A stretch of DNA of 64,000 nucleotides from Macrostomum lignano (GCA_002269645.1 NIVC01001829.1:1-64000); one strand, 5' to 3'; counted from the first letter of the stretch, positions 24,188-60,038 are shown. Notes: a model not told the origin generated them from the sequence alone. Program-made: numbers and translations.

Positions 24188-26164
24188 GATTTTGCGTATA
24201 TTTGTTTAAGCTAGTCATTTATACTTAACAAGTATAGGGAGGTGTGAGATCGAACTGGCTGGCTGGGCAAAACTCCCCAGCAGCCAGACGTGCAGGGGCC
24301 TGTGTATTGGCGGGGTCCGCTCTCAGCCGTGCACCGATCTGGCCACAATACGGAAAAATAAGGTCTAAAATTACTATCGCTATCATTTGGTCTGTAGTCA
24401 AATCGTACCCATAGAGATTTCCTTTTAGTCTCTTCTGAATACTCGTACAAGTATTTAATGTGTTATATTTTTGTACGTACATGTAATCGTAATAATTTAC
24501 TACATGCATATGGCCTTCAAGAACAGATATTTAGTAATATTTAGAAATTCTCAGTTGGGGATCGTTGGTTTCCTTCAATAAAATTATGAACGCGTTTCAA
24601 TACATTGAATTAATTACTATATTCGTTTACGAAGTTAGTGAAGGGAAACTTCCAGAAATATTTTTTTTTAAAAAGCTTTAAATTGTTTGCGATATCAAAA
24701 AACTATATTGTTCCCAGTTAATGTTGTTTTTTGTTCAGCTTCAATGCAAAACTGCTATAGGCCCTGAAGCTATTGGCTAGAAATACAAGCCTCATCTTGC
24801 AAGGGGCCCAAAACCCTTGATATTTAGAAGTCTCTGGTTTCTAGCTAAAATTATTTATGCTATTTAAATATTTTTTCTCTTTTTCTAATAAACTCTTTTT
24901 TACATGGCACTTCAAAAATGTCTGCAATTTTACAAACGGACACCTGGCTTAAACTGAACGAGCCTGTATTTTCTTCCAATCATTTTACCAATCTAGAGGA
25001 AAAAATTTAGCTTTTGCAGGTTCCGTCTCGTTGGAATTCTTCCTTCTACGAGGGAAGAAAGAGACTAAAAGTAAAGGAATGGTTCGGGGCAGTAACAAAG
25101 AGTAAGGCCCCAGTACCATATACGCGATATTGAACAAAGAACAGGAAACCATATGCTCTCTCCAGGAGTGTTTTACGAGCGGGTTACTAAAGAGATATTT
25201 TACAGAGATAAAAGGCCGAATCCTTCCTTCTGTCTGTCTCTCTCTATATATATACTAAAGTTGACGCGTTGTTTGTCTGTCTGTATGTCTGTCTGTATGT
25301 CTGTCTGTCATTTCGACAACTCCTCCTTGAATAGTGCCAACTCAGCGTTGAAACTTATATGGGAAGATTGGAAATTATCCGAGGTCGGCTATAGGCTATT
25401 TTAATTCTGAAATTTTAATTTCTAAGATCCTCAAAAAAGCAGAAAACGGCGGTCTTGACCTTTGATAATCTTAATTGTCCCCTCTTTCTGCTTGGAGCTG
25501 AAAATTTGCATGAATTTCAAGTGATTGCGCCACAACTTTTCCCTATCTCTGCAGTGTATTTTCTCTCCAGTGGGGGGATGGGGCGTTCTAAATGGCTGCC
25601 TGTGTACAATCGGACCCTGGCTCACTGGCTGACTGTATAGATAATTGCGCAATGATATGGCTACTGATAAGTTTTCCTGCCTTTCAATGGGCAGCCCTGT
25701 GTATTTGTTGGACATTGAAATTCAATGCTTCAACTTGCAAGCAGGCAGTGAACGTACACTCGATACTTCAATGCTATAAATCAGACAGTTTCAAACGCTA
25801 ACTGTTCCTCGAGTTTTAAACTTTGAGAGGAGAAACTTATATTGCTGGAAAGATCTTGCAACGCTGAGTTCGGGATATAAGTTGTTTGCTTTAAATATGA
25901 AAAGAAAAAGCACAGCATTTGAAAAACTATTTCCATACTTTTAACTTTCTGCAAAGATTGTACTTTAATCTGCAAAGATTGTTGGGGGAGGGTTCAACTT
26001 CTCACTGCTGCTGTGTATTGGAGGGTCGATTTAGATTGCGCAATGTTTTTGTTAACTTTACCTGAGGCTGATACTGACTGACTGTGAAATCGGTTGCGCA
26101 ATGAATTGATTCAAATAGTTCAATATTTTTATCTGTGCCTTTTAACACAAAGTTGTGCGTAGTT

Positions 26165-26204
26165 CTAACCCTAACCCTAACCCTAACCCTAACCCTAACC
26201 CTAA
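26165..26204 (+). repeat. Telomere-like (CCCTAA)n block, unit 1
   Basis: (CTAACC)6 CTAA. Equivalent blocks lie at 28431-28454, 30641-30669, 33552-33569, 34589-34624, 37158-37185, 40183-40206 and 42542-42565. Confidence 0.95.
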
Positions 26205-26624
26205 TGAATCTGCCGAGTTGAGTTGTTTGACGGAAAAAATTCGATTAAGTCAAGTTTAGCGGAGACGATTTCAATGTTTAAATTCTGACGGAGAAGATTT
26301 CTGTTTCGTGGAGAGGATTTCGATGATGTTCAGTTTCACGAAAGGATTTCGATGATGTTCAGTTTCACGAAAGGATTTCCATGGTGTTCAGTTTCACGGA
26401 GAGGATTTCGATCATGTTCAGCTTCACGGAGAGGCTTTCTGTTTCGCGGAGATAATTTATGATTGATTTCTGTTTTATGGAAACAATTTTGATGGATTTA
26501 AGTTTCAAGGAGAGGATTTCGAAGGAGTCCAGTTTCACTGAGAGGATTTCGATGGTTTTTAGTTGCACAGACAGGATTTTTGCTTCGCGGAGAGGATCTT
26601 GATGGATTTGGCATCTTCAATCAG

Positions 26625-27330
26625 TCAGAGAAGAGAGTAAAGAGAAGACTGAAAAGAGAAGAGAGAAGAGATGCTAGAAAACAGAGTATAATTGAGTGGA
26701 GAGATTAGACATGACAGATTGGAGATGATAGGATAGAGAATAGATGAGGGATAAGAGCGTACAGAGGCAATAGAAGAGAGGGGAGAGTAGAGGAGAAAGA
26801 AAGAGTGAGATGAGGAGATGAGGGATGAGAGAGGAGGGGAGAGAGGAGACAGGAGAGAGTACAGACGAAAGACTAGGGAGAAGATATAAATAAGGTAGTA
26901 AAGATGAGAGGAGAGAGAGGAGAGAGAAGCGAAAGGAGAAGAGAGTGAGGAGAGAGGAGAGAGATGAAAGGAGCAAGGAAAGGAGAAAAGAGAGAATGGA
27001 GAGAATAGAAAAGAGAGAAGAGAAGAGACAGGGGATAGTGAAAAGGAGGAAGAAAGATGGGAGACAAGAAAGAAAGTAGGGTGTGAGAGCGTATATGAGA
27101 TATCAGAAATGAGAAGCAGATAGGAGAGAAAAGAGAAGAGAGAGAGGGTTAAGAGAGACGATAGATAAGTAAGGAGAAATGACATATGAGAGAGGAGAGA
27201 AGAGGGAGAGATAAGAGTGAAGAGAGGAGACAGAAGACAGGAGAAGGTACAGACGAAAGACGAGGGAGAAGAGATAAATAAGGGAGCAGGGGTAGAGATG
27301 AGATGAGAGAGAGGAGAGAGGAGATATGAG
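26625..27330. repeat. Purine-only tract of unit 1
   Basis: A/G-dominated + strand. Equivalents lie at ~28680-29520, 31065-32030, 34920-36070, 37845-38640, 40570-41390 and 43100-44110; absent from unit 4. Confidence 0.92.
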
Positions 27331-29745
27331 AGACTTGAGAGTCTTTAAACTATGGTCTTTGAAAGATTTTGTAAAGAATTTGGAGACGATTTGGAAGATA
27401 GGGTTAAAGACATGGAATTTCAGTTGATGGATATTTCAGGGAATAGAATTCCGGTGATGGGTGTTCTTCCCCTTTCTCCTCCGAAGGAGGAGTTCCACTC
27501 GTCTATCTATATATACTAAAGTTGACGCGTTGTTTGTCTGTCTGTATGTCTGTCTGTATGTCTGTCTGTCATTTCGACAACTCCTCCTTGAATAGTGCCA
27601 ACTCAGCGTTGAAACTTATATGGGAAGATTGGAAATTATCCGAGGTCGGCTATAGGCTATTTTAATTCTGAAATTTTAATTTCTAAGATCCTCAAAAAAG
27701 CAGAAAACTTGAATCTTGACCTTTGATAATCTTAATTGTCCCCTCTTTCTGCTTGGAGCTGAAAAAATGCACGAATTTTTAGTGATTGCGCCACAACTTT
27801 TCCCTATCTCTGTAGTGTATTTTCTTTCCAGTGGGGGTTGGGAGCGTTCTCAGTGGCTGCGTGTGTACACTTGGACCCTGGCTCACTGGCTGACTGTATA
27901 GATAATTGCGCAATGATATGGCTACTGATAAGTTTTCCTGCCTTTCAATGGGCAGCCCTGTGTATTTGTTGGACATTGAAATTCAATGCATCAACTTGCA
28001 AGCAGGCAGTCAACGTACACTCGATACTTCAATGCAATAAATCAGACAGTTTTAAACGCTAACTGTTCCTCGAGTTTTAAACTTTGATAGGAGAAACTGA
28101 TATTGCTGGAAAGATCTTGCAACGCTGAGTTCGGGGATATAAGTTGTTTGCTTTAAATATGAAAAGAAAAAGCACAGCATTTGAAAAACTATTTCCATAC
28201 TTTTAACTTGCTGCAAAGATTGTACTCAGTTTTGCGAGACGTAATAGATAAAGCTGGGGGGAGGGTTCAACTTCTCACTGCTGCTGTGTATTGGAGGGTT
28301 GATTTAGATTGCGCAATGCTTTTGTTAACTTTAACTGAGACTGATACTGACTGACTGTGAAATCGGTTGCGCAATGAATTGATTCAATTAGTTCAATCAG
28401 TTGTCTTTTAACACGATGCTGTGCGTAGTTCTAACCCTAACCCTAACCCTAACCAATGAATCCGGAGAGTTAAGTTGTTTGACGGAAAAAATTCGATTAA
28501 GTCCAGTTTAGCGGAGACGATTTCAATGTTTTAATTTTGACGGAGAGGATTTCTGTTTCGTGGAGAGGATTTCGATGGTGTTCAGTTTCACGGAGAGGAT
28601 TTCGATGGTTTTCAGTTGTACGGACAGGATTTTTCTGCTTCGCGGAGAGGATCTTGATGGATTTGGCATCTTCAATTAGTCAGAGAAGAGAGTAAAGAGA
28701 AGAATGAAAAGAGAAGAGAGATGAGATGATAGAAAACAGAGTAGAAATGAGTGGAGAGATTAGACATGACAGATGGGAGAGAAGAGGGGAGTAAGGCGGG
28801 AACGAAGGAGAGAGAAGAGAAGAGGAGAGAGGAGATGAAGGAAGAGGATATGAGAGAGAAGATATGAGATAGAAGAGAGGAGACAGGACAGAGAAGAAAA
28901 GAGGGATAAGAGCGCACAGAGGCAATAGAAGAGAGGAAAGAGAGGAGAGAGGTGAGAGTTGAGAGGAGAGAGATGAAAGATCAGAGATCAGAGATTTGAG
29001 AGAAGAAAGTAGTGAGGAGAAAGAAGAGGGTAAAGATGAGAGTGCAGAGAGGAGAGAAACGAGAGGAGACAGGTGGTAGAAAGGAGTGTAAAAACAGGAG
29101 ATAAGAAAGGAGAGAGTGAGAGTGAGAGCATATAGGAAAGTGTAAAAGGGGAGCAGAGGAGAGAGAATAGATAAGTGAGTAGAGAAGAGATATGAGAGAG
29201 GAGAGACGAGGGGAGAGAGGAGACAGGAGAGAGTAAATTTGAAAGACCTGGGAGAAGAGATAAATAAGATAGTACAGATGAGAGGAGAGAGATGAGAGAT
29301 GCAAATAGAAAAGAGATAAGTGAGAAAAGAGAGAGAGAGAGATTTGAGAAGAGAGGGGAAAAGATGAGAGGAGAAAGGAAAGGGGAGAAGAAAAAATGGA
29401 GAGGAGAGAAAAGAAAGGTGACAAGAGACGGTAGTAAGGAGGGCAGAAAGATGGAAGATAAGAAAGGAGAGGGTGATATGAAAGATATGAGATATGAGAA
29501 ATGAGAGCAGAGACATGAGAGTCCGAGTCTGGACAATGCCAGTGAGTTTTTGCAAATAGGGAAAACAAGATATCCGGTAATTGAAATGCATTGTAGAGGA
29601 TTTGGAGATGATTTGGAAGATGGGATTCAAGTCATGGAATTTCAGCTGATGGGAGTTCTTCCCCTTCAGAATTCCAGTGATGGGAGTTCTTCCCCTTTCT
29701 CCTCCAGAGGAGGAGTTCCACTCGTATATACTAAAGTTGACGCGT

Positions 29746-29777
<32 letters not shown>

Positions 29778-32700
29778 ATTTCGACAACTCCTCCTTGAAT
29801 AGTGGCAACTCAGCGTTGAAACTTATATGGGAAGATTGGAAATTATCCGAGGTCGGCTATAGGCTATTTTAATTCTGAAATTTTAATTTCTAAGATCCTC
29901 AAAAAAGCAGAAAACGGCGGTCTTGACCTTTGATAATCTTAATTGTCCCTCTTTCTGCTTGGAGCTGAAAATTTGCATGAATTTCAAGTGATTGCGCCAC
30001 AACTTTTCCCTATCTCTGCAGTGTATTTTCTCTCCAGTGGGGGGATGGGGCGTTCTAAATGGCTGCCTGTGTACAATCGGACCCTGGCTCACTGGCTGAC
30101 TGTATAGACAATTGCGCAAAGATTTGTGTTCTAATTTTCAATAGGCAGCCCTGTGATTTTGTTGAACCTTGAAATTCAATGCATAAACTTGCGGGCCTCT
30201 TTAGCAGGCAGTGAACGTACAATTGATATTTCAATGCTTTAAATCAGAAAGTTTCAAGCGCAAACTGTTGCTCGAGTTTTTAACTTTGAGAGAAAAAATT
30301 AATATTGCTGGAAAGAACTTGCAAAGCTGATTTCAGGGATATAAATTGTTTGCTTTAAATATGAAAAGAAAAAGCACAGCATTGAAAAAACTATTTCCAT
30401 ACTTTTAACTTTCTGCAAAAATTGTACTCAGTTTTGCGAGACGTAATAGATAAAGTTGGGGGGAGAGTTCAACTTCTCACTGCTGCTGTGTATTGGAGGG
30501 TTGATTTAGATTGCGCAATGTTTTTGTTAACTTTACCTGAGGCTGATACTGACTGACTGTGAAATCGGTTGCGCAATGAATTGATTCAATTAGTTCAATA
30601 TTTTTATCAGCGCCTTTTAACACGAAGCTGTGCGTAGTTTTAACCCTAACCCTAACCCTAACCCTAACCAATGAATCCGGAGTTGAGTTGTTTGACGGAA
30701 AAAAATTGATTGAGTCCAGTTTAGCGGAGACGATTTCAATGTTTTAATTTGACAGAGAGGATTTCTGTTTCGTGGAGAGGATTTCGATGATGTTCAGTTT
30801 CACGAAGAGAGGATTTCGATGATGTTCAGTTTCACGAAGAGAGGATTTCGATGATGTTCAGCTTCACGGAGAGGATTTCTGTTTCGCGGAGATAATTTAT
30901 AATTGATTTCTGTTTTATGAAGACCATTTTGATGGATTTAAGTTTTAATGAGAGGATTTCGAAGGAGTCCAGTTTTACGGAGAGGATTTCGATGGTTTTC
31001 AGTTGCACAGACAAGATTTCTGCTTCGCAGAGAGGATCTTGATGGATTTGGCATCTTCAATCAGTCAGAGAAGAGAGTAAAGAGAAGAATGAAAAGAGAA
31101 GAGCGATGACATGATAGAAAACAGAGTAGAAATGAATGGAGAGATTAGACATGACAGATGGGAGAGAAGAGGTGAGTAAGGCGGGAACGAAGGAGAGAGA
31201 AGAGAAGAGGAGAGAGGAGATGAGAGGGGAGATATGAGATAGCAAAGGGAGACAAGAGAGATAATAGGAGAGAGAATAGATGAGGGATAAGAGCGTACAG
31301 AGGAAATAGAAGAGAGGGGAGAGTAGAGGAGAAAGAAAGAGTGAGATGAGGGATGAGAGATGAGAGAGGAAAGGAGAGAGAAGAGAAGAGAAAAGAGGGG
31401 AGAAAGGAGACAGGAGAGAGAGCAGACGAAAGACCAGGGAGAAGATATAAATAAGGTAGTAGAGATGAGAGGAGAGAGAGGAGAGAGAAGCGAAAGGAGA
31501 AGAGAGTGAGGAGAGAGGAGAGAGATGAAAGATCAGAGATGAGAGAGTTAAGAGAGGAAAGTAGTGAGGAGAGGAGAGATAAGAGATGCGATGAGAAGAG
31601 ATGCGTGAGAACATAAGAGAGAAGAGATTAGAGATTAGAGAAGAGAGGGGAGAAGATCAAAGGAGCAAGGAGAGGAGAAAAGAGAGAATGGAGAGGATAT
31701 AAAAGAGAGAAGAGAAGAGACAGGGGATAGTGGAAAGAAGGAAAGAAAGATGGGAGACAAGAAAGTAGAGTGTGAGAGCGTATATGAGATATGATAAATG
31801 AGAGCTGAGAGAAGAGAAAAGAGAAGAGACAGAGAGGGTTAAGAGAGACGATAGATAAGTGAGTAGAGATGACATATGAGAGAGGAGAGAAGAGGGAGAG
31901 ATATGAGAGAAGAGACGGGACAAGAGACAGGAGAGGGTACAGACGAAAGACGAGGGAGAAGAGATAAATAAGGGAGCAGGGGTAGAGATGAGATGAGAGA
32001 GAGGAGAGAGGAGATATGAGAGACTTGAGAGTCTTTGAGCTATGGTCTTTGAAAGATTTTGTAAAGAATTTGGAGACGATTTGGAAGATAGGGTTAAAGA
32101 CATGGAATTTCAGTTGATGGATATTTCAGGAAATGGAATTCCGGTGATGGGAGTTCTTCCCCTTTCTCCTCCGAAGGAGGAGTTCCACTCGTAAATACTA
32201 AAGTTGGTGCGATGTTTGTCTGTTTGTCTGTTTGTCCGTTTGTTGCATAACTCCTCCTAGAATACTTGCAAGTCAGCTTTGAAACTTATATGGGAAAACG
32301 GCAAATTTTCCGAGGATGGCTTTAGGCTATTTTAATCTTTCATTTTTACGTTTTAAGATCCCTAAAAAAGCAGAAAACGGCGGTCTTGACCTTTGATAAT
32401 CTTAATTGTCCCCTCTTTCTGCTTGGAGCTGAAAATTTGCATGAATTTTAGTGATTGCGCCATAAAATTTTGCTATCTTGGCAGTGTATTTTCTCTCCAG
32501 TGGGGGGATGGTCGCCTTCTCAGTGGCGGCGTGTGTACACTTTTACCTTGGAGCACGGGCTGACTGACTGTATAGAAAATTGCGCAACGATATATGTTCT
32601 GATTTTCAATAGGCAGCCCTGTGTATTTATTTGTTGGACAGTGAATTCAATTTGAATAAACTTGCGAGCATCTTTAGCACGCACTGAACGTACACTCGAT

Positions 32701-35021: not shown

Positions 35022-35082
35022 CTTAGCTGCAGGGCTGTCCCGGGGGGACACAGCGGGAAGGCGCGAATGCCCATTCCGCTAA
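35022..35082 (-). mobile_element. 61-bp insertion with 12-bp target-site duplication (likely an extremely 5'-truncated retroposon)
   Basis: acagatgggaga at 35010-35021 and 35083-35094; the insert is absent from the other units. Confidence 0.65.
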
Positions 35083-37439: not shown

Positions 37440-37660
37440 GAGAGGATTCGAAGGAGTCCAGTTTCACGGAGAGGATTTCGATGGTTTTCAGTTTCGTGGA
37501 GAGGATTTCGATGGTGTTCAGTTTCGTGGAGAGGATTTCAATGATGTTCAGTTTCGTGGAAAGGATTTCGATGATGTTCAGTTTCGTGGAAAGGATTTCG
37601 ATGGTGTTCAGTTTCGTGGAAAGGATTTCGATGATGTTCAGTTTCACGGAGAGGATTTCT
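37440..37660. repeat. Expanded 30-bp internal minisatellite in unit 6
   Basis: ttcagtttc(g/a)(t/c)gga(g/a)aggatttcgatg(a/g)tg repeated ~7 times; 1-3 copies at the same place in most other units. Confidence 0.9.
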
Positions 37661-48900: not shown

Positions 48901-51575
48901 TCCGCAAAGCGACGCAAGATCGACGAGATCGACGAATACCTACTGGGCAGGTTCATCGGTCCAATGGAGGCGGTCAACACCATCCTGGGCTTATGAGGTG
49001 CACAGCCGATACCCCCTGTGATCAGGCTCGCGGTTGATCTTAAGGACGAGCAGCGGGTCTTTTTCACTGACGAGACGACTCAGGCTGTTGCTGCTACGCC
49101 CAAGGCCACGACTTTGACCGCCTTCTTCGATGTGAGTTTTGCGGACGAAGTGCAATTTGTTCAATTTATTCCTCCTTCCTGTTTCTACCCGCCCACTTTC
49201 CTGTTCCTACCCGCCCAGCTCTGTCGCCATGACGAAATCGCCCGAGGTCTGCTGTACCAGGAGGTACCCCGGCACTTCACCTGGGACCCCAGGGCGCACC
49301 AGTGGCATCGCGCAGGTCGCGGCCGAGTCGCTGCTGATCAGCCAGCCGATGTTCTGACGACCAGCAACATCGGCCGCATCTACACAGTCAGTCCTCGGCT
49401 GGGCGACTGTTTCTACCTGCGCCTGCTGCTGGTGAATTTGCGCGGCCCGACTTCGTTCGAGGCTCTGCGCACTGTTGATGGAGTCCTGTTGCCGACCTTC
49501 AAGGCCGCCTGCCAGGCTCACGGACTGCTGGAGGATGACAGGCACTGGCAGCTGTGCCTGTCCGAAGCTGCCCAGACGCGGATGCCTGCTGCTCTGCGCC
49601 GACTTTTTGCCGCAATTTTGGCGCACGGCGATCCCAGCGACCCCGCGAAGCTCTGGGAGGAGTTTTCCCGCGAGATGGCTGGCGACCTGCTGCACCAGGG
49701 CTTGAGCGCCGAGGCTGCTATGGCCGAAGTTCTGCGGTCGCTGCAGAAGCGGCTGGAGCGGATGGGCGGATCCGAGCTGTCTGCCTACGGCCTTCCTGAA
49801 CCACCGGCAGAGCCGGATCAGGTAAATGAACTCACTGCTATGCACTGACTGTTAATATTTTTAACCTTTAATAGCTTACTGATGACAACTTCTTTTTAAT
49901 ATCCAGACTCGGCTTCTTTCTGATTGCCTGCCGACGCTGCAAGAAGCTGCTGAGCTGCAGTCTGAAGTGGATGCGCTGGTCGCTACCCTGACTGACGAGC
50001 AGCGTGCAGTCCAATCTGACGGCCGGCGGCGGCGGGCTGCATTTCATTGACGCTCCTGGCGGCACAGGCAAGACGTTCCTGCTCACGCTTCTGCTGAAGT
50101 CGGTTCGAGCAAGGCGTCAAATTGCTGTTGCCGTCGCGTCATCGGGCATCGCGGCGACTATTCTTCCCGGAGGTCGAACCGCCCACTCGATGTGAGTTTA
50201 GTGTCCGCATAAATCATTTTATAAACTGTTAGTTTTTAAGCACAGAAAGTCATGCCTAATTTATCATCACAATTGACCATCCTCGCGATACCTGCCTGCA
50301 GGTTCAAGATCCCCGTCTGCGCTGTACGGCAGGACAGCGCCTTCTGCTCCATCGGCAGGCGGAGCAAACTGGCGGAGATTCTGCGGAACGCCCGCCTCAT
50401 CGTGTGGGACGAGGCTCCGATGACGCACCGCAAAGACCTCGAGATCGTCGAGCGTTCTCTGCGTGATTTGCTGCACGGTGGGCAGCCGTTCGGGGAGCGC
50501 TGCTGGTGCTGGCTGGCGACTTTCGCCAGTTGCTTGCTGTTGTGCCCGGAGGGACGCAGGCCAACACGATCGAAGCCTGCCTGAATCGGTCGGTGCTGTG
50601 GCAGCACTTCCGGCAGCACCAGCTCACAAGGAATCTGCGGCTGGAGGGCGGCTCGGCTCTCCAAAGCTACGCAGATTTTCTTATGCAGGTGAGAATCTAT
50701 GGAGTTTCTATGCTCTAATTAAACATGAAAATTGAAGAAAAAAATTGTAAAATTTCTACTCAATAAAAATTAATATTTCTACTCATTCCACTTTTCACTG
50801 TCAGGTTGGCAACGGGGAGCTGCCAGAGGACGTAGAGGGCATGGTCTCCTTGTCTAGCGAGATCCTTCTGCCCGAGGACACAACCACTGAGCAGCTCATC
50901 CGGCACGTTTACCCGTCCTTTGAGCCGAGTGCGCAGCGTGACCAGATGTTCGCGGAGCGGAGCATCCTGGCGCCACTCAACAGGACGGTGGACGAGGCCA
51001 ACGCCGCCTGCTTAGCGCTCTTTCCCGGTGAGAGCCGAGTCTACCTGTCGGTCGACTCGATTCCGAATGACGACACGGCAGCCACCAATTTTCCGCCGGA
51101 GCTGCTGAACCGGCTGGACCCCAGCGGTATGTCGCATCACCGACTGGAGCTGAAGGTCGGCATGCCGGTCGTCATGATGAGGAATCTGGACCCACCGCTG
51201 CTGTGCAATGGGACTTGGCTGCTGCTGCGCGAACTGCGTGACAACGTCCTGCTCGCGGAGGTCGCCACTGGCATCTACCGTGGGCGGCAGGGGTTCATCC
51301 CGCGGATTCCGCAGGAGCCGAGTCCGACCGAGATCCCGTTCGTTTTCCGCCGTCTGCAGTTCCCGATCCGGCCGTGCTTCGCCATGACCATCCACAAGAG
51401 CCAGGGCCAGTCGCTGGGCACCTACCCTGTCGACCTGACGACAGCTTGCTTTCAGCATGGCCAGCTCTACGTGGCTCTGAGTCGTGCGCGGAGTGCCGAT
51501 GGCGTTAAAGTTCGGGCTCCAGGCGGATGTACGAGAAACATCGTGTTGCGTCAGCTTATCGGCAAGCAGAACTAA
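45977..51575 (+). pseudogene. Helitron Rep (HUH endonuclease)-Pif1 helicase gene, 9 exons, several disablements
   Basis: Exons ~45977-46386, 46530-46647, 46837-47412, 47560-48198, 48290-49131, 49219-49821, 49907-50191, 50302-50688, 50805-51575. Motifs CPHC..CC, DLFLTMTCNPKW, EYQKRG|LPHVH, YVVKYITKG, DAPGGTGKT, IVWDEAPM, GDFRQ, FAMTIHKSQGQSL, QLYVALSR. Frameshift near 47350-47390, TGA at 48994-48996, deletion near 50010, frameshift near 50495. Confidence 0.95.
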
Positions 51576-51640
51576 CTATTATCTGAACTGAACTGAATCA
51601 TAGGCAGGATGAAAGAATATATAGGTTTGAGTGACATATT

Positions 51641-52100
51641 AGAAGAGTGAGTGGCAAATTATGAGAGTGAGTGACAAATTATGAGAGTGAGTGACAAATT
51701 ATGAGAGTGAGTGACAAATTATGAGAGTGAGTGACAAATTATGAGAGTGAGTGACGAATTATGAGAGAATTGACAAATTTTGAGAGTGAGTAAGTGACAA
51801 ATTATGAGACCGAGTAACAAATTATTAGTGAGTGAGTGAATGAAAAATGTTAAGAGAGAGTGACAAATTATGATAGCGAGTTGGTGGAAAATTATGCGGA
51901 GTCATTAATCATGAGTGGGAGTGAAAAATTATGAGTGACAAATTTCAGTGCGATAATACTTAGGAGGGTGCAAATTCAGGCTGTCAAATTAAGCGTCACG
52001 AATTATGAGTCTGATAAAATATGAGTCATAAATTATGAGTGACAAATTTACGAGTGAAAATGCTTATGAGAGTGCTAAATTGAGAGTGTCGCAAATTATA
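51641..52100. repeat. 20-bp minisatellite (atgagagtgagtgacaaatt), ~6 clean copies then degenerate
   Basis: Near-exact units at 51661, 51681, 51701, 51721 and 51741; eroded copies continue to ~52100. Confidence 0.92.
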
Positions 52101-53640
52101 AGTGATAAATTTTTAACAAAAACGATTAGGTGGTGGCAAAATTGTTTCTTGACAGAGTTGCTAAATGAATTTCATACACGGGGAGCTTTTAAGAATGCTC
52201 AGGCTCCTATCAATTTAGATTCAATTGCCATACTTATTTTTTCTGAATTTTTTTAATGTACAAAGTGGCCGTTCGTAATTATTTATGTTAAGCTCTATAT
52301 TTTGTTACATTTGTTAATATTTATTTATTTATTTAATATTGTCAGTTCAGTTATCCGGTTTCTTCCACTGCTTTCCACTTTCTCTTCACCTTTACTTGCA
52401 CCCCTATTATAATACAAATGCATTTGCTTTATTAAAAAATATATGCCATACCGTACTCGGGGTGCGCAGGATTCTGAATACAAACAAGGCTGTCAATCAT
52501 AGGCTATTAGTAACAAGCAATAAGTAATAGAAAGGCATAAAATTCACATGAATTTAAACTTAACAAGTACTTAGCCAAAGAGACTATCCCATTTATTCGA
52601 TCGTTTCCTGCGTACCCCCAATGATGTCTTTGAATTAGTTTTTTATATTCAACAGAGGCGAAGGAAATTCGAGTACGAGTATTCAGCTAGCTGTGAAAGG
52701 AACGCAGCAACATCAGTACTTGAAGAAGTCAAGAAGTTATAACTCAGTGCAGCTATACAAAGTAGTTTTGGTACTTCTTCCACCATTTTCACTAAGATGT
52801 ACAGTGCCTGCGTGACTGCTATTGCTGACGGGCAGCCAATCAGTTTTGCACATTTAAACTGCCTTATAGTGCAGCGGCAGAGAATGAGTAGCCAACCAGC
52901 TGTTATAGAATGAATTCATTTAATTAATGATTTGCGCAAAATCTATCACAGACTTTAGATTATCACAACTTAATACTGACGACGAACTCTAAGCTCTAAA
53001 CAGAGAATGCCATAGCAGATCATTTTAAGCTGCAATCGCATCCTAACGCTGAATCATATTCCTTGAGTTGGCAGTGAGCACTTGAATTTAACACTATTGA
53101 GACTGCCAAACCCAAAACCGTAAACCCCAGACATTGTACTCTAGCCTTAAAGCTCGCTTAAAAGTTTAGCCAATCAAAAACATTTTCAGTAAGCTTACCA
53201 TTAATGTGAACTCTGTAACTTTAGAGCGACCAAAATTAACTGTGTTGCGCAACATTTAAAAGTCAAATTGAAAGGTTTCAGTTCATATGAATCTAATTAA
53301 ATTGTGAGACTCTCTACACCAGCTTATATACAATTTATTCACTCACCAATGCAGGTGCTAAGTCTTTTGAGAACTGGAATAAATCCATCTGGCAGACACC
53401 TCACCAAACCAAAAAACACCAGTTCTCACCCCAAACCGCGCCTATAAATACAAGATCGCAAACTCAGCCCCAATTATCAGTTATCAATCGACAGTCAACT
53501 GTATTGCATATAAGTCAAAAATTTCCAAGTCAACACAGTCCAACAACAACCTGGAGAAATTCGAAAGACTGCAGAAAGCCATGGAGCAGCACTTCAGTTT
53601 GTTCGTGAGAAAAACATCTGAAATGCTTCAGGAGGAGCAC

Positions 53641-56600
53641 TGCCACCAGCAACCAAATAAATAATCCGCCGCCGGCGAACCAACCTGTTAACCTGCACAT
53701 TATTCAGATCAACCTGCACCACGCCCTTGCAGCATCGAGCAACCTTTCAGGCACCTTTGCCAACAAGGAAGTTGACATCTACCTTATTCAGGAACCGTAT
53801 ACCCGCAAGGGGAAGCCGACCTGCCTGCCGCCAGGCTATCAGGTTCTGTACCTCTGCGCGAACGACACCCCCAGGGCTATCGCCCTCGTCAAAAACGACC
53901 TCCCGGCCACTATTATGCCAATGTTTTGCTCTAAAGACATGTGTACTTTCTCAGTCTTTGACTTGACCTTCGTTTCCGCTTACCTGGACATCCAGGAAGA
54001 CGTCCCTCCCCCCCTCCTGCAGGAGCTGGCGGACTTCTGTAATCTCCAGGATCGGAAGCTTATCGTTAGCTGCGATGCTAACGCCCACAACACTGCCTGG
54101 TCTAGTAGCGATACTAACAGGCGCGGTGACTTACTAATTGATTTCATTAACTCCTCCTCGTTACACATTTGCAACAGAGGCAGCAAACCCACATTTATTG
54201 TCTCTAATCGGCGTGAGGTTATCGACCTCACTCTCGTCTCCAACAACGCCCTCAATCAGGTCCACAGCTGGCTGGTTAGGGATGACCTCCCATCGCTTTC
54301 CGACCACTCGTACATTCAGTACAGCATCAGCTCCGTCGGAGCCCGTCATGAGAACCGGGACCGCCTTAATTTGAAAAAGGCCGACTGGACAGGTTTTCGA
54401 AGAGACCTGCTAAAACTCCTGACCGAAGCCAACGTACCGGACTCCAGCGAGGATCTCCCTGGCATTGAGCATCGGTGCAACTCCATCGTTGAGATCCTAA
54501 ACACCGCCATACGCGCTAACGCCCCTAAGCTGTTTTGCAGGAAGAAATACTCTCCTTGGTGGAGTCAAGAGCTCACTCGCATGAAGAAAAACACCCGCCG
54601 ACTGCAACGCCTCGCAAACGGCTCGAATACTCCAGAGGATTGGGAGAACTACCACTCTGCTCTGAGGATGTACAAAAGTACTATCCGAAGGGCTAAGAAG
54701 ACCACCTGGAAAGCCTACTGCGCCGGCCTGGAAGGGCAACACCCCACAGCCCGGCTGGTCAGGACTCTCAGGCACGACACGCTAGCTCAGTGTAACTCCC
54801 TTCTGCACCTGGATGGTAACTACACTACCAGTGTCGAAGGTTCGCTAAATCTTCTTTTCTCCACCTGCTTTCCGCAGGTTGACGAACCGGAGTACGTGGT
54901 CGATGACCACAGGCCTTGTGATCACAAGCTTTTCCAGCAGTGCGCCACCCCCAGCTACTCCAGCTGGCAGCAAATTCTTTTAAACCGTATAAATCGTCTG
55001 GCCCTGACAATATCGCCCCCTGTATCCTGCAGGAGGCGCTAAAGCTGCAAAACTTTGCTGATTCTTTCTCTAAATTGCTTGTTGACTGTTATACCACAGG
55101 TTACATTCCCACAATCTGGAGAATGTCCAGAGTCGTGTTCATCCCGAAACCTGCTAAGGGTGACTACACCAACGTGAAATCCTTCCGGCCCATCAGCCTC
55201 ACTTCCTTTTGTGTTAAGCTGATGGAGAGGCTCATCCTGTGGAGGCTTCGAGAGTGCGACCTGCGCTCCGACCCTGTCAGTAAGTACCAGTACGCCTTCC
55301 AGTCTGGGAGGACGACTGAGCATGCTCTCCACGCCATTACCTCCAAAATTGAGAGTGCCATCCTTAGCAAACAACTCGCTTGCGGGTTGTTCGTTGACTT
55401 CGAAGGAGCATTTGACAATGTCCTCTTCCGCTCCTTCAGAAATTCTCTTTCCCGCAGGAATGTAAGACACAGCATTGTTCGCTGGATTTATTTTATGATC
55501 CGCAAAAGGTTTGTGACATCCACACTTATGGGCGTTACCCTCACCCGGGCGGTGATGAAAGGCGGCCCGCAAGGTGGCGTGCTAACTCCACTTCTCTGGA
55601 ATCTCGTCATGGACGAACTTCTAACCGCTGACATTCCCAGCAGTATCACCAGGGCGGGCTACGCCGATGACGTTGCCGCGGTCGTCAGCGGACCCGACCC
55701 CGCCACTCTGCGCAACCTGATGCAGCAATTCGCCGACAAGGCGGCCGACTGGGCTACACAGCATGGCCTAAAAATCAGCGTCACTAAGACTGTCGCTGTC
55801 GTTTTCACCAAGCGCCGTAAGTGGGAGATGAAAAACCTCACTGTCTATGGCAGAAACATCCCCTTCAAGAAGGAGGTCAAATACCTCGGTGTGACGCTAA
55901 CGCATGACCTGCGCTGGACGAAGCACCTTGATAACGTCATCGGTCGGGCAAAACGCTGCTTTGCCCAGCTGCGCAGAGCCATCGGGCCGACTTGGGGCCT
56001 CTCGCCTAGAACGGTCCGTTGGATTTATACCGGCATCATCCGGCCCAGTATCACATACGCGAGTCTCATCTGGACTAGCGTGCTGGAGCAGAAGGTCGCC
56101 CGTCAGCGGCTGTACCAGCTTCAGGGCAGCATTTGCCGTGCCATCACAGGTGCGTACCCGTCCACCCCTTACGAGGGGCTGAACACTATCCTTAACCTAC
56201 CTCCGCTTCACCTATTTATTAGGGCGGAGGCTATGAAGTCTGCCTCCCGGCTTATTAGAGATAAAACGTTGAATAACGCGCCCTCTGGCTTTATGCCAAT
56301 GAAAACATTAATCCCGCATATGGACTTTGTCCGCCGCGACCTTAACAACATCCACATGGACCTGGGCAATGTGGATAGTCGACCTCCCGCCCTCAACATC
56401 AGGAGGGGCTTCAAGACCGCCATCCCTGGCCGAGACAACATTCCGCTGGATGTCGGTGTGAACCGGCGCAGCCAGGGCATTCACTGCTTCACCGACGGCT
56501 CGCTGTTCAACGGCCGCGCTGGAGCGGGTATTGCCATTTTCCACGAGGGTAAGATGCTTCTCCAGGAAAGTCTGCACCTCGGTGAGAACACCTCAGTTTT

Positions 56601-57474
56601 CCAAGCTGAAATTTGCGCCATCGAGCAGTGTGCCCAGCAACTGTTTCAGGCGAACATTAATAATTTTGACATTAATTTCTACACTGATAGCCAAGCTGCT
56701 ATTAAGGCCTTAACCACTGAGAATATCTCCGCTGCTACAGTATCTCAATGCCACCGCAGTGTGCAATCTCTCTCAGTCCTTAACAGGATTAGAATTATCT
56801 GGACACCTGGTCACAGCAACATCCTGGGCAACGAGCTCGCAGACTCTCTCGCCAAGGAGGGCAGCAACCCAGACGGCAACCACCGTCTGATGAGGCTACC
56901 CACCCCCAGGTCGCAAGTCACCCGCCATATCAACAGGTGGCTCCATCAGCAGCACCAGCTCCACTGGAACAGCTGCACCGAGTACAGGCAGAGCCGCTCT
57001 GCCATGCCTAACCTGAACAGGAAAGTCTCTGATTATCTGATTTCGCTTAACAGAACCGACCTCAGGGAGATGTGCATGGTCCTAACCGGCCACGGATTCT
57101 TCCAGAGACATATATCGTTGCAAACCGGTTGCCCTCCCACCTGCCCCTTCTGTGGCATAGGAGAGGAGACCGCGGAGCATCACGTCACCTTCTGCCCTTA
57201 CTTCAACAAGGCGCGGCACAAATACCTCGGCCACCCCCAGCGGATGGACGAGCTGACCACCGCGGACAATATCCGAGACCTCCGCGCCTTCGTCCGGGAC
57301 TCCGGCCGGATGAGGGTCGCCGATGCCTCCACTGCGGACCTGCCGACTACTGGCGGGGACTGGGCGCACCCCCAAGGCTAATCCTTGTGCTCTTTTACCT
57401 TGGGGTTGCGATAGGGGCCTCGCGGCCTATTCGCGGCGCCTGCGCCCCCCGTCAGTAGTAAGTAAGTAAGTAAG
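53641..57474 (+). mobile_element. Non-LTR retrotransposon (I-group, LOA/Lian-like), 5'-truncated
   Basis: 14-bp TSD ttcaggaggagcac at 53627-53640 and 57475-57488; (TAAG)n tail at ~57458-57474; no ORF1. Confidence 0.92.
53693..57381 (+). CDS. LINE ORF2: APE endonuclease, reverse transcriptase, RNase H and C-terminal Cys/His knuckle; one frameshift
   Basis: QINLHH, LIQEP, CDANAH, SDH; [19 protein letters not shown]; [31 protein letters not shown]; [15 protein letters not shown]. The frame switches at the C5 run 54948-54952. Confidence 0.93.
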
Positions 57475-57989
57475 TTCAGGAGGAGCACAAATCGGCACAA
57501 CATGAAGCAAAGCTCAAGTCCTCCCTCGAAAAAGTTGTAATGGAGCAACGACAGCAGCTGGAGCACTACAAGAAGCGACTGGCAGACACCGAAGCCGAAC
57601 TGAAGAGCAAGAAGAAGGAGTGCGACCGCTTGGCTGCCTTCCTGCAAGACGAGGATGCTGCTTTGCTCGCCTGCGTCAAAGACACCGCTTCGGGCCAGCC
57701 ACCTGCGAAGCGACTCTGCAGTCGGGACGACGGCTCTGCTCAGCACCCGGACGGACCGGCTGTGGAGCCGCAGCCCGGAGCGGACTCGGCGAAGGCGAGC
57801 GAAACAGACTAAGTATAACAGACTAACTATTCTATTTACTAAATATCTGTAATTAACTTATATTTTCTGCTGGAATTCTGACTGCTTATAGATACCCATC
57901 AGCTAGAAAAAAACAAGTAATAATCTACATCTTAGACACTTAAAATTTTAAAACTTGCGAAATACAATTTAACAAATTAAAAATAAAAA

Positions 57990-58405
57990 TGTCTTCTCTT
58001 GCAGTCGGGTAACCAAGCAGTCGCATTCCTTCTCCTTGCACTCCCAGTTCGTATTCGTGTTTGCCAGTAGCTTCAAGTACTTTCAGCTGCTTTCTTTGCT
58101 CTGTTACAATTTCTTTCGAAATGGACTTGATCTTTGCTTCCTGTTGTGCCCTTTTATACTCGGCAACAGTCAAAAGTTCCACAAGTACAAATCCGGTTTA
58201 GTTAGAGAACTTCTCATTTAAAATGCACAGTAAAAGGTGAATACAAATATCTTTGCTTGGCGGGTGGATCTTTTGACTGTTGTTGGGTATAATTGCTTCT
58301 CCTGATCATTCAGATGTTATTCTTGCGCTCAAACTGTAAGTGCCTTCTGTGGCTTTCTGCAGCTTTTCGATTTCTTTAAGTTGTTTTCGGACTGTGTTGA
58401 CTAAT
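57990..58405 (-). pseudogene. Inverted, decayed paralog of the coiled-coil ORF
   Basis: The minus strand reads agtcaacacagtccgaaaacaac...gctgcagaaagcc (cf. 53528-53580) and gcacaacaggaagcaaagatcaagtcc (cf. ~57494-57520); peptide AEYKRAQQEAKIKSISKEIVTEQRKQL versus EEHKSAQHEAKLKSSLEKVVMEQRQQL. Confidence 0.8.
58157..58289. mobile_element. ~130-bp MITE-like insertion flanked by TA
   Basis: tatactcggcaacagtcaaaag (58155-58176) versus cttttgactgttgttgggtata (58270-58291): 22-bp inverted repeat with 3 mismatches and a perfect 13-bp core. Confidence 0.6.
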
Positions 58406-59041
58406 AAAATGTACTGTAAATATGTCTTTGCTTATTTTTATGCTTTTAATTTCATTGCAATATTTGCCTCGCTTATGTCCATGAAAGTGCAGTTTTTTCA
58501 TGCAATTAAAAAAACATTAAGTTACTACATGTGCCAAACTTAAGCTTCAAAGCTAGGATTCTATAGGGGGTGGAGTTCTAATCAGAGCACAGATTGTACT
58601 CATTTTTGGGATAGGTCAAATATAAAGTTAAGGTGTTCAATTTCTAACTGCTAATGTGCATTGGAGGGTTGATTTACATTGCGTAACTTTATAAAAAAGA
58701 TAAGTGAGACTGATACTGACTGACTGAGATAACGATTGCGCCATCTATTGTTCAATTTGTTTTATCATCGGTGCCTTTCAAAAGGCAGCCCTGTGTATTA
58801 ACCGGGGGGTTGCTGAGTATCGGCGGGGAGTGTGCATTGGAGGGTTAATTTAGATTGAGTAATCATTTGTTCACATAATTGAAACTGATGCCGACTGCCT
58901 AAGAAATTGATTGTCAACCGCTTCGTGGGACTTTTACTGAAACTGAGTTGGGTCATGGGATTCAGCTGATGGAGTTCAGGGATTTGAATTCCGGTGATGG
59001 GAGTTCTTCCCCTTTCTCCTCCGAAGGAGGAGTTGACCTCG

Positions 59042-59870: not shown

Positions 59871-60038
59871 GAATGCCGTGAAAAAATAAAGAAGTTGGGG
59901 AGTTTCTCGGTTGCTAGCGGTCGGGCCGGTACGGGCTTAAGCAACCCCCCGGTCGCTAACTCTTGGCCTGGTTGTTGGGTTTGGGGTTACGGCCCAGCGG
60001 CTTCTCACCTCTAGTCCCCATTCGCCTTTCAGCGACTC

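What the first reader, a model, noticed from the sequence alone, without database searches (positions are those of the whole stretch)
25243..59041. ~34-kb composite Helitron: eight complete mini-elements concatenated head-to-tail onto their autonomous parent
Seen: eight units with a TATATACTAAAG-type start and a hairpin/CTCG-type end are joined with no intervening host DNA and all point the same way. The array runs into a Rep/Pif1 gene whose own 3' end (58560-59041) carries the same hairpin-CTCG. Established: Helitrons replicate by rolling circle, have 5' TC and 3' hairpin-CTRR ends, and tandem arrays are known in some genomes. Inference: the units are internal-deletion derivatives amplified in place next to the master copy by terminator read-through or concatemer insertion. 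This would be a satellite DNA caught while forming, with eight internal start/stop signals that could release single units, multimers or the whole composite.
Basis: partly seen in the sequence, partly recalled or inferred. Interest (0 to 1): 0.85.

Follow-up and report, generated by a model that had tools for sequence, protein, structure and literature searches.

The report
Head-to-tail Helitron array in flatworm
Eight small rolling-circle transposons (Helitrons) sit end to end in front of a broken copy of the transposase-bearing element in a Macrostomum flatworm genome; it is a clean example of a kind of tandem array already reported in several other organisms, not a new kind of element.

Summary
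From 25243 to 59041 there are eight same-strand units. Each starts with T(A/T)ATACTAAAG and each ends in an invariant 7-bp-stem hairpin plus 9 nt (…CTCG). Only 0-8 nt separate neighbours. A RepHel gene (Helraiser, E=1e-162) follows, and its element ends in the same hairpin-CTCG.

- The units fall into at least four subfamilies and are 74-99% identical mosaics.
- Seven carry about 1.4 kb that the Rep copy lacks: a telomere-like (CCCTAA)n run, a 30-bp minisatellite and a GA-rich block. Only unit 4 is a deletion derivative.
- The "parent" is dead. It has an in-frame stop, two frameshifts and a LINE insertion, and its 5' end is deleted, which fuses it to unit 8.
- A second Macrostomum lignano contig has the same layout and shares junction variants, but ends at the same 3' terminus in a different flank.

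So this is an older, recombining array, and multi-unit blocks have probably moved. It is not a satellite caught forming next to its master. Tandem Helitron arrays are already reported in bat, Drosophila, plants, Xenopus and Hydractinia. I class it as a new member of a known kind, of moderate-to-low interest.

The parts
25243..27501 (+). Unit 1 (subfamily A). Left end of the array: TC(TA)5CTAAAG, with TATATACTAAA at 25249. Hairpin 27476-27492, 3' end ...CACTCG at 27501.
   Evidence: the left flank is unique
27502..29724 (+). Unit 2 (subfamily A at the 5' side; the 3' half is like unit 7). Starts with the 8-nt filler TCTATCTA, then TATATACTAAAG at 27510. Hairpin 29699-29715 (loop AGA).
   Evidence: the same junction with 99% identical flanks is in L001 1-594
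29725..32191 (+). Unit 3 (subfamily B). Precise junction CACTCG|TATATAC on its left. Hairpin 32166-32182.
32192..33670 (+). Unit 4 (subfamily D, 1479 bp), start TAAATACTAAAG. It consists of the 5' region of the Rep-bearing type plus the last ~75 nt of that type's 3' end. It has no CCCTAA run and no GA block, and is the only real deletion derivative.
   Evidence: the same junction precedes the Rep-bearing copy in L001 at 7646
33671..36238 (+). Unit 5 (subfamily A). Hairpin 36213-36229. The 3' tail reads TTCCATCTA, so CTCG is not intact.
36239..38807 (+). Unit 6 (subfamily C, 96-97% to L001 398-1400). Hairpin 38784-38800. The 3' tail is shortened to TTCCACT.
38808..41597 (+). Unit 7 (subfamily B). 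Hairpin 41572-41588 (loop AGA), 3' end CACTCG, followed by the filler TCTA at 41598-41601.
41602..44261 (+). Unit 8 (subfamily B, 98.6% to unit 7 over the first 700 nt). Its terminator is truncated after the left hairpin arm (44249-44261).
44262..45976 (+). 5' non-coding region of the Rep-bearing copy. It is homologous to the first ~1.3 kb of the units at about 70-88%. Its own 5' terminus was removed by a deletion of about 35-40 nt relative to L001 7630-7671.
45977..51575 (+). RepHel transposase gene with introns. HUH motif GLPHVHALLW from 48277, YxxxY motif KYVVKYITKG, Pif1 helicase with GGTGKT. Defects: in-frame TGA at 48994-48996, and frameshifts near 50010-50040 and near 50495.
51628..51839 (+). 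20-bp minisatellite (about 10 copies) just after the RepHel stop codon.
53581..57812 (+). Second ORF of the Rep-bearing copy (127 aa, coiled-coil-like). It spans 53581-53627 plus 57476-57812 and is split by the LINE.
53641..57475 (+). 5'-truncated non-LTR retrotransposon (endonuclease-RT-RNase H ORFs, (AGTA)n tail). Its 13-bp target-site duplication TCAGGAGGAGCAC is at 53628-53640 and 57476-57488. This is a later insertion, not part of the Helitron.
58560..59041 (+). 3' terminal region of the Rep-bearing copy. 58631-58761 and 58952-59041 are homologous to the units. Hairpin 59016-59032, 3' end TTGACCTCG at 59041.
59042..59052 (+). TATATACTAAA: the first 11 nt of a unit 5' end, joined precisely to the last 3' end and followed by unrelated sequence.
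26169..26204 (+). Telomere-like (CCCTAA)6 run in unit 1. Equivalent runs of 3-5 copies are at 28435, 30644, 34593, 37162, 40187 and 42546. Each lies at the border between the Rep-homologous 5' module and the unit-specific module.

Best explanation
This is a cluster of canonical (Helraiser-type) Helitrons in a Macrostomum lignano-like genome.

**What is there**
- Seven 2.2-2.8-kb non-autonomous elements and one 1.5-kb deletion derivative are joined head-to-tail exactly at their termini.
- A decayed RepHel-bearing copy follows. A small deletion of the junction has fused it to unit 8.

**How it most likely arose (inferred)**
1. The RepHel transposase nicks a 5' terminus (T[A/T]ATACTAAAG) and unwinds towards the 3' side.
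2. It normally stops at the first hairpin plus CTCG and joins the 3' end to the 5' end, forming a circle.
3. Head-to-tail joints of the form CTCG|TATATAC are the signature of that joining. They enter the chromosome either when multimeric products integrate or when the terminator is bypassed and several units move as one block.
4. Once two or more units lie in tandem, unequal crossing-over and gene conversion, within the array and with arrays elsewhere, expand and shuffle it. That produces the mosaic of subfamilies seen now.

**Shown versus inferred**
- Shown: the anatomy, the Helitron identity, the conserved terminator, the mosaicism, and the recurrence of the layout at a second locus with a different 3' flank.
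- Inferred: that rolling-circle products seeded the array and that multi-unit blocks have transposed.

The locus cannot currently supply transposase, because its own RepHel gene is broken.
For: **Helitron identity**
- The window's Rep region is 95% identical to an M. lignano Helitron_like_N protein.
- The conceptual RepHel matches Helraiser 7LCC at E=1e-162.
- The HUH and YxxxY motifs are present.
- There are no terminal inverted repeats.

**The termini define the repeat phase**
- The array starts at the 5' motif, next to unique flank.
- It ends at hairpin-CTCG.
- In L001 the Rep-bearing copy ends ...GGAGGAGTTGGCCTCG|TTGTTG in a flank unrelated to the window.
- In L002 a solo, related Rep-bearing Helitron begins its homology at TTATACTAAAAC with no unit upstream.

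**The terminator looks constrained**
- The stem is invariant in 13 copies while the loop varies (GAA, AGA, ATC).
- The last 34 alignment columns are 91% identical, against 66% or less further in.

**Junction evidence**
- Precise CTCG|T(A/T)ATAC joints occur at W-J3, J4, J5 and the right end, and at L001 J3 and J4.
- Junction variants are shared between the two loci. TCTATC has 99% identical flanks over 594 nt. The TAAATAC junction has 92% identity over 594 nt.

**Recombination**
- The best match switches unit every 0.4-1.2 kb.
- The block formed by the 3' half of unit 2, J3 and unit 3 corresponds to the block formed by the 3' half of unit 7, J8 and unit 8 at 96-99%.

**Literature**
- Helraiser makes circles with precise head-to-tail joints, and those circles are transposition-competent (PMC4778049).
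- Tandem Helitron arrays are attributed to this mechanism.
Against: - No solo non-autonomous unit and no empty site could be examined. A protein-database search with ORFs from the units found nothing. Mobility of single units with these exact ends is therefore not demonstrated.
- The 3' tetranucleotide is CTCG, not CTRR.
- A 5' TC is present at only some starts.
- The A|T target rule is only half verifiable.
- Junctions are heterogeneous (fillers TCTA and TCTATCTA, eroded CTCG). One concatemer from one template would not give that.
- The junctions shared with L001 could come from ectopic gene conversion rather than from block transposition.
- The left end of the L001 array lies outside the fetched 21 kb.
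Confidence: 0.6

Rival explanations
1. Arrays grow by repeated self-targeted insertion. New copies integrate at an A|T step inside the AT-rich 5' terminus (TCTA|TATATAC) of a resident copy, or immediately after a resident 3' end. Each unit would then be an independent insertion.
For: - Units of different subfamilies are interleaved.
- J2 (CACTCG-TCTA-TCTATATATAC) and J3 (CACTCG-TATATAC) are exactly what insertion of unit 2 into TCTA|TATATAC of unit 3 would give.
- The 11-nt TATATACTAAA after the last 3' end could be the remainder of a targeted resident 5' end.
- CT-rich tracts precede the 5' end both at the window's left flank and in L002. The units' own 3' ends are CT-rich as well.
- Fusarium and Metarhizium Helitrons inserted into or next to the 5' end of another copy have been reported (PMC5148889).
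Against: - J3 and J8 are copies of one ancestral junction: their flanks are 96-99% identical on both sides. They differ by just the TCTA. The TCTA gain or loss therefore looks like slippage rather than an insertion scar.
- Only one "+TCTA" partner exists for four or five "-TCTA" junctions.
- The solo related element in L002 starts at TTATAC with no TC or TCTA.
Confidence: 0.15
2. This is an ordinary macrosatellite. One chance head-to-tail pair was expanded and spread purely by unequal crossing-over, segmental or whole-genome duplication and ectopic conversion. Multimers never transposed.
For: - The units are extensively mosaic.
- Identities range from 74 to 99%.
- Minisatellite copy number varies from 4 to 14.
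- From my own knowledge: M. lignano carries a recent genome duplication that could supply paralogous loci.
Against: - The composite ends exactly at the Helitron 3' terminus in two different flanks: window 59041 and L001 11393. The array also starts exactly at the 5' motif. Duplication breakpoints would not be expected to respect the termini.
- The terminal 34 columns are far better conserved than the interior.
Confidence: 0.15
3. The composite is a single functional giant Helitron. The upstream units are an integral multi-terminus 5' region of the Rep-bearing element, and the composite always moves as a whole.
For: - The Rep-bearing copy sits at the downstream end of an array at both loci examined.
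- Inside the window, unit 4 (Rep-type) follows three units. The array can therefore be read as two composites in tandem.
- Helitrons with multiple termini are known (PMC5148889).
Against: - The number and order of units differ between the loci.
- The related Rep-bearing element in L002 has no upstream units.
- Each unit keeps a conserved terminator that should normally stop transposition.
Confidence: 0.08
4. The array is an assembly artefact, that is, a falsely expanded repeat.
For: Long tandem repeats are prone to misassembly. No reads were available.
Against: - Every unit is distinct: different subfamilies, lengths of 1479-2790 bp, and private junction variants.
- The same architecture appears in an independent contig.
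Confidence: 0.02

Closest known systems
Tandem arrays of Helibat/Helitron elements in Myotis lucifugus (Pritham & Feschotte 2007, as cited), and the Helraiser mechanism (PMC4778049)
   Same: - A RepHel transposase of the same type (7LCC, E=1e-162).
- A subterminal 3' palindrome: 17 bp, 9 nt from the end here; 19 bp, 11 nt from the end in Helraiser.
- A T follows the 3' end.
- Head-to-tail joints like those of Helraiser circles.
- Arrays explained by rolling-circle products.
   Different: - The 3' end is CTCG, not CTAG.
- A 5' TC is not consistently present.
- The units are diverged mosaics of several subfamilies.
- The array abuts a Rep-bearing copy.
- No activity data exist.
Helitron-1_DPe tandem clusters on the large Y chromosome of Drosophila pseudoobscura (bioRxiv 10.1101/2021.06.02.446622)
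   Same: Full or partial Helitron copies are joined head-to-tail. They were detected there by last-50-bp/first-50-bp junction queries.
   Different: - There the autonomous-size 7.2-kb element itself is the repeated unit and the amplification is recent (about 1000 copies).
- Here the units are mostly non-autonomous, older and heterogeneous.
Helitron-derived tandem arrays in plant centromeres/Arabidopsis, in Xenopus laevis (43 arrays, 2-7 copies, monomers 121-1996 nt; PMC12001565) and in Hydractinia subtelomeres (PMC11934779)
   Same: Helitron sequences are organised as tandem repeats and attributed to rolling-circle replication. They are possible seeds of satellite DNA.
   Different: - Most of those arrays are truncated copies or internal minisatellites.
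- Here complete 5'-to-3' elements with intact terminators are the monomers, and the monomer is larger (up to 2.8 kb).
Helitrons with multiple termini or composite Helitrons in Fusarium/Metarhizium (PMC5148889)
   Same: Several 5' or 3' termini lie in one locus. Three copies in tandem are reported in Metarhizium acridum. Both self-insertion and rolling-circle replication were discussed there as causes.
   Different: Those are fungal, non-canonical elements with few copies per locus, and no array of non-autonomous units sits upstream of the Rep copy.
Telomere-associated Helitrons (Paramecium germline chromosome ends, PMC13085455)
   Same: C-strand telomeric repeats lie in the same orientation as the element, and satellites are carried between the ORF and the ends.
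   Different: - In Paramecium the telomeric repeats flank the element, because they are the target.
- Here a short (CCCTAA)3-6 run lies inside each unit, about 0.9 kb from the 5' end, and nothing shows that the locus is near a chromosome end.

Membership tests
Helitron (canonical, Helitron1/Helraiser type) | Encodes a RepHel protein: an HUH nuclease with two catalytic tyrosines fused to a Pif1-like SF1B helicase | tested here: met
   - Helraiser 7LCC E=1e-162 and PIF1 structures around E=1e-24.
- Pfam Helitron_like_N on a 95% identical M. lignano protein.
- HUH motif GLPHVHALLW, YxxxY motif KYVVKYITKG, helicase motif GGTGKT.
- The gene is broken by a stop codon and two frameshifts.
Helitron (canonical, Helitron1/Helraiser type) | Short hairpin about 10-12 nt upstream of the 3' end | tested here: met
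   CTCCTCC-NNN-GGAGGAG lies 9 nt from the end in all 13 termini examined. The stem is invariant and the loop is GAA, AGA or ATC. Conservation rises to 91% at the terminus.
Helitron (canonical, Helitron1/Helraiser type) | 3' terminus CTRR | tested here: not met
   The terminus is CTCG, with C rather than a purine at the third base, in 10 of 13 copies. Three are eroded. Non-CTRR ends such as CTTG are known for Helraiser and maize, so this is a variant rather than an exclusion.
Helitron (canonical, Helitron1/Helraiser type) | 5' terminus TC | tested here: inconclusive
   - TC directly precedes the (TA)n at the left end and at J2, J6 and J8.
- It is absent at J3, J4, J5, J7 and the right-end remnant.
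- It is also absent from the solo related element in L002 (cccc|TTATACTAAAA).
Helitron (canonical, Helitron1/Helraiser type) | Insertion between host A and T without target-site duplication | tested here: inconclusive
   - A T follows the 3' end at window 59042 and at L001 11394.
- The base before the 5' end is A if the element starts at 25249, and C if it starts at the TC at 25243.
- In L002 that base is C or T.
- No empty site was available.
- TATATACTAAA flanks the whole composite on both sides, but it is element sequence, not a duplication. It is present at every internal junction, and in L002 it continues into homologous sequence.
Helitron (canonical, Helitron1/Helraiser type) | No terminal inverted repeats | tested here: met
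   No inverted 12-mer (up to 1 mismatch) from the first 40 nt occurs in the last 400 nt of any unit.
Helentron / Helitron2 | Asymmetric terminal inverted repeats, and often a C-terminal endonuclease domain after the helicase | tested here: not met
   There are no inverted terminal matches. The RepHel frame stops at 51575 and is followed by a minisatellite, with no ORF of 100 aa or more before 53581. The best structural relative is Helraiser.
Tandem (head-to-tail) Helitron array | Complete or partial copies in one orientation, with the 3' terminus joined directly to a 5' terminus | tested here: met
   Eight junctions have 0-8 nt between the 3' end and the 5' motif, and a ninth is deleted. The same is seen at four junctions in L001.
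Nascent satellite DNA (array just amplified from one master) | Near-identical monomers derived from the adjacent source copy | tested here: not met
   The first 700 nt are 74-99% identical between units, in at least four subfamilies. The adjacent Rep copy's 5' region is only about 70% identical to them. The units are mosaics shared with another locus.
Non-autonomous deletion derivative of the neighbouring autonomous element | The unit consists only of sequence present in the autonomous copy | tested here: not met
   Seven of the eight units contain a (CCCTAA)n run, a 30-bp minisatellite and a 0.7-1.1-kb GA-rich block that have no match in 45554-58631. Only unit 4 fits.

The most novel reading that the evidence does not exclude
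In this Helitron family the terminator is bypassed often enough that multi-unit blocks (several non-autonomous units plus a Rep-bearing copy) transpose as one piece. Ready-made kilobase-scale tandem arrays would then be seeded at new loci. That would be a direct transposon-to-satellite route in which the array, not the monomer, is the unit of spread. A further speculation: the telomere-like tract inside every unit records capture from, or affinity for, chromosome ends.
Probability: 0.25. Interest if true: 0.55.

Novelty: new member of a known kind. Interest (0 to 1): 0.35.

Why it matters
Tandem Helitron arrays are one proposed route from transposons to satellite DNA. This locus is an unusually legible example. 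Every monomer still has both termini, and the junctions can be read base by base. A second locus shares some of those junctions yet ends at the same terminus in a different flank. In a laboratory flatworm with a repeat-rich, recently duplicated genome, it could be used to test whether Helitron multimers move as blocks and how quickly recombination reshuffles them. It does not reveal a new kind of element or mechanism.

Tried and rejected
1. **Solo units through the protein database.** I searched with a concatenation of seven short ORFs from the unit ends and 5' region. There were no hits, so solo versus array copies could not be counted. This used the last of the three homology searches.
2. 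**Pif1 C-terminal domain search.** The best hits were only 52-66% identical, so it gave no further copy of this family with a readable 3' end.
3. **Exact look-up of the LINE-2 ORF1, and BLAST of both flanks against all fetched loci.** Nothing was found. I could not tell whether 59053 onwards is the 5' UTR of a LINE that splits a tenth unit, and no empty site was found.
4. **My own idea that unit 2 inserted into the 5' terminus of unit 3.** J2 has an extra TCTA and J3 lacks one. I downgraded this after one search showed that J3 and J8 are the same ancestral junction and differ only by that TCTA.
5. **An 11-bp target-site duplication (TATATACTAAA on both sides of the composite).** Rejected. The motif is at every internal junction. 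The L001 3' flank lacks it. In L002 the homologous TTATACTAAAA is the start of a longer stretch of element homology.
6. **Error corrected.** The file L001.fa holds both L001 and L002, so the listing mixed the two loci. I had briefly read an 83% Rep fragment as lying in the L001 flank. One search, run per record, shows that it belongs to L002 and that the L001 flank is unrelated to the window.
7. **Other Helitron loci of M. lignano (L002, L003).** They have no kilobase-scale arrays and neither terminal motif.
8. **Rfam and tRNA scans of the window.** Nothing was found.
9. **The original Pritham & Feschotte paper.** It could not be opened and is cited only through papers that cite it.

Full report
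**Where the window comes from.** It is eukaryotic. The Rep region is 95% identical to a Macrostomum lignano protein annotated with a Helitron helicase-like domain (BOX15_Mlig000328g25). Another dispersed repeat in the window is 95% identical to an M. lignano contig. The source is therefore M. lignano or a very close relative. The neighbourhood is rich in transposons. It holds a Mos1-type mariner transposase ORF at 8132-9199 (E=2e-39), a Helitron fragment on the minus strand at 3160-4516, and two LINEs.

**The observation.** A direct-repeat array with 1.5-2.8-kb spacing fills 25241-45600.
- The motif TATATACTAAA occurs exactly at 25249, 27510, 29725, 33671, 36239, 38808, 41602 and 59042, and as TAAATACTAAA at 32192. 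With up to one mismatch there are 12 hits against 0.87 expected.
- Nine nucleotides before each unit end lies the palindrome CTCCTCC-NNN-GGAGGAG. It folds as a 7-bp stem.
- All units point the same way.
- Between the 3' end and the next 5' motif there are 0 nt (J3 at 29724/29725, J4 at 32191/32192, J5 at 33670/33671), 4 nt TCTA (J8) or 8 nt TCTATCTA (J2).
- Two junctions have an eroded CTCG: J6 reads TTCCA-TCTA and J7 reads CACT.
- The ninth junction, between unit 8 and the Rep-bearing copy at about 44262, has lost about 35-40 nt: the right hairpin arm, the CTCG and the next 5' start. This is judged against the intact equivalent in L001 7630-7671.
- The Rep-bearing copy ends at 59041 with the same hairpin followed by TTGACCTCG.

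**Anatomy of the units.** Seven units (2215-2790 bp) have the same four-part plan.
1. About 0.9-1.3 kb homologous to the 5' non-coding region of the Rep-bearing copy.
2. A (CCCTAA)3-6 run.
3. A 30-bp minisatellite of 4-14 copies, then a 0.7-1.1-kb block that is at least 80% purine. This block explains the strong GC skew seen.
4. About 140 nt of 3' end.

None of the middle 1.4 kb has a match in the Rep-bearing copy between 45554 and 58631. Unit 4 (1479 bp) is different. It consists of the 5' region of the Rep-bearing type plus the last ~75 nt of that type's 3' end, which is 96% identical to 58961-59034. It lacks both the telomere-like run and the GA block. Only one of the eight units is therefore an internal-deletion derivative.

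**The Rep-bearing copy.** The gene runs from 45977 to 51575 and has introns.
- Its conceptual product matches the Helraiser transposase structure 7LCC at E=1e-162, and PIF1 helicases.
- It has an HUH motif (GLPHVHALLW), a two-tyrosine motif (KYVVKYITKG) and a Walker A motif (GGTGKT).
- It is not intact. There is an in-frame TGA at 48994-48996. One frameshift lies near 50010-50040 and a second near 50495. Sequencing error cannot be excluded for the frameshifts.
- Downstream lies a 20-bp minisatellite.
- A 127-aa coiled-coil-like ORF follows. It is split by a 3835-bp 5'-truncated LINE with a 13-bp target-site duplication.
- The element has also lost its own 5' terminus. The only way to mobilise it would be from the 5' end of unit 8, as a 17.4-kb chimera, or from further upstream.

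"Autonomous parent" therefore overstates what is present.

**Evidence from elsewhere.**
- *L001* (NIVC01004741.1) has at least four head-to-tail junctions followed by a Rep-bearing copy whose 5' end is intact (CACTCG|TAAATACTAAAGTTGGTGCGATG). That junction is the same as the window's J4, with 92% identity over 594 nt spanning it. The first L001 junction is the TCTATC variant of the window's J2, with 99% identity over 594 nt. The Rep copy in L001 is internally deleted and ends ...CTCCTCC-ATC-GGAGGAG-TTGGCCTCG|TTGTTGTATAAAG. What follows is unrelated to anything in the window. This gives an independent 3' boundary in a different flank.
- *L002* carries a solo, related Rep-bearing Helitron (78-88% identical). 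Its homology to the units begins at ...ctctcccc|TTATACTAAAACTGACGCGATG, with no unit upstream. This gives an independent 5' boundary. It also suggests that the TCTA fillers and the "TC" are not obligatory parts of the terminus.
- Across 13 termini the hairpin stem never varies while the loop does. Identity climbs from 66% or less to 91% over the last 34 columns. That pattern is what a cis-acting terminator would show, although gene conversion could contribute.

**History of the array.**
- By their first 700 nt the units form four subfamilies. A is units 1, 2 and 5 plus two L001 units (95-98%). B is units 3, 7 and 8 (97-99%). C is unit 6 plus one L001 unit (96%). D is unit 4 plus the L001 Rep-type 5' end (84%).
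- The window's own Rep 5' region is only about 70% identical to any of them. The order along the array is A A B D A C B B.
- A 400-nt sliding comparison shows that the best match switches between units every 0.4-1.2 kb.
- Some two-unit stretches are duplicated. The 3' half of unit 2, J3 and unit 3 correspond to the 3' half of unit 7, J8 and unit 8 at 96-99%.
- Cross-locus identity (up to 97-99%) equals within-locus identity.

This is the signature of unequal exchange and gene conversion in an array that has existed for some time. It is not a single recent in-place amplification from the neighbouring copy.

**Mechanism.** The following is what I think is most likely, at a confidence of about 0.6.
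- Head-to-tail joints were first made by the Helitron machinery. Helraiser joins its 3' end precisely to its 5' end in circles that remain transposition-competent. Bypass of the terminator is documented (PMC4778049).
- Six junctions here are precise CTCG|T(A/T)ATAC joints.
- The composites in the window and in L001 share inherited junction variants, yet each ends exactly at a Helitron 3' terminus in a different flank. That is easier to explain by transposition of a multi-unit block, with initiation at an upstream 5' end and read-through of internal terminators, than by segmental duplication. Ectopic conversion between independent arrays is not excluded.
- After seeding, recombination shaped the array.
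- The 11 nt TATATACTAAA that follow the final 3' end (59042-59052) are a precise joint to the start of another unit. They could be the stub of a donor multimer or circle. They could be a resident 5' end that was targeted. They could also be a tenth unit split by the second LINE, whose 5' boundary I could not determine.

**Rivals.**
- *Sequential self-targeted insertion.* This is suggested by the complementary J2/J3 pair. It is weakened because J3 and J8 are the same ancestral junction and differ only by TCTA.
- *A pure recombinational macrosatellite.* This is weakened because the array boundaries respect the termini in different flanks.
- *A single giant multi-terminus element.* This is weakened by the variable unit content between loci and by the solo relative in L002.
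- *An assembly artefact.* This is unlikely, because every unit is distinct and a second contig agrees.

**Comparison with what is known.**
- Tandem Helitron copies are reported for Myotis, Drosophila, rice, maize and Arabidopsis centromeres, and for Metarhizium.
- They are also reported for Xenopus, with 43 arrays of 2-7 copies, and for Hydractinia subtelomeres.
- I found no description of such arrays in Macrostomum. Only four held papers mention both terms, and none concerns this.
- The element meets four Helitron criteria: the RepHel protein, the subterminal hairpin, the absence of inverted repeats, and a T after the 3' end. It departs in its CTCG end and in its inconsistent 5' TC. The A|T target rule could not be fully checked.
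- It is not a Helentron or Helitron2.

**Verdict.** The feature is real and mostly well described. The Helitron-array reading is right. The "nascent satellite next to its autonomous master" reading is not supported. It is a new member of a known kind, with interest of about 0.35. The most novel reading still open is habitual block transposition that seeds arrays, at a probability of about 0.25.

Noticed in passing
window 26169-26204, 28435-28452, 30644-30667, 34593-34622, 37162-37185, 40187-40204, 42546-42563: Seven of the eight units carry a telomere-like (CCCTAA)3-6 run on the element's own strand. It sits at the border between the module shared with the Rep-bearing copy and the unit-specific module. 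This could mark an old capture of subtelomeric sequence.
   Followed up: partly
window 53641-57475 (target-site duplications at 53628-53640 and 57476-57488): A 5'-truncated non-LTR retrotransposon (endonuclease, RT, RNase H; (AGTA)n tail) with a 13-bp target-site duplication TCAGGAGGAGCAC. It splits a 127-aa coiled-coil-like second ORF of the Rep-bearing Helitron (53581-53627 plus 57476-57812).
   Followed up: partly
window 59053-64000: A second, different LINE: ORF1 at 60039-60929 and fragmented endonuclease/RT frames running to the window edge. Its 5' boundary is unknown. It may begin right after the 11-nt Helitron 5' stub, in which case the array would continue beyond it.
   Followed up: partly
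window 8132-9199 (+): An uninterrupted 355-aa Mos1-type mariner transposase ORF (PDB 3HOS, E=2e-39), so possibly a young mariner copy.
   Followed up: partly
window 3160-4516 (-): An inverted fragment of a Helitron of the same group: Rep exons 1-2 and upstream sequence, 82-94% identical to 46004-46682 and to 36497-36697.
   Followed up: partly
window 25220-25244; L002 8255-8296: Polypyrimidine (CT-rich) tracts lie immediately upstream of the Helitron 5' end in two unrelated flanks. The units' own 3' ends are CT-rich just before the hairpin. This may reflect a target preference that favours landing next to a resident copy.
   Followed up: no
window 11659-12366: A 39-bp tandem repeat with at least 13 copies at up to 99% identity. 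It produces long spurious ORFs in several frames.
   Followed up: no
window 9532-11157 (+): A 541-aa ORF of unknown function directly after the mariner ORF. It was not characterised.
   Followed up: no
window 26625-27185, 28680-29630, 35079-35966, 40571-41503, 43100-43990 (-): Long TTG/ATG-start ORFs (185-316 aa, rich in S/L/P) on the minus strand of the GA-rich blocks. They are most likely artefacts of low-complexity sequence rather than genes.
   Followed up: no
window 19861-20209; L003 16787-17128: A 350-bp dispersed repeat, 95% identical between the window and another M. lignano contig. It is unrelated to the Helitron.
   Followed up: no
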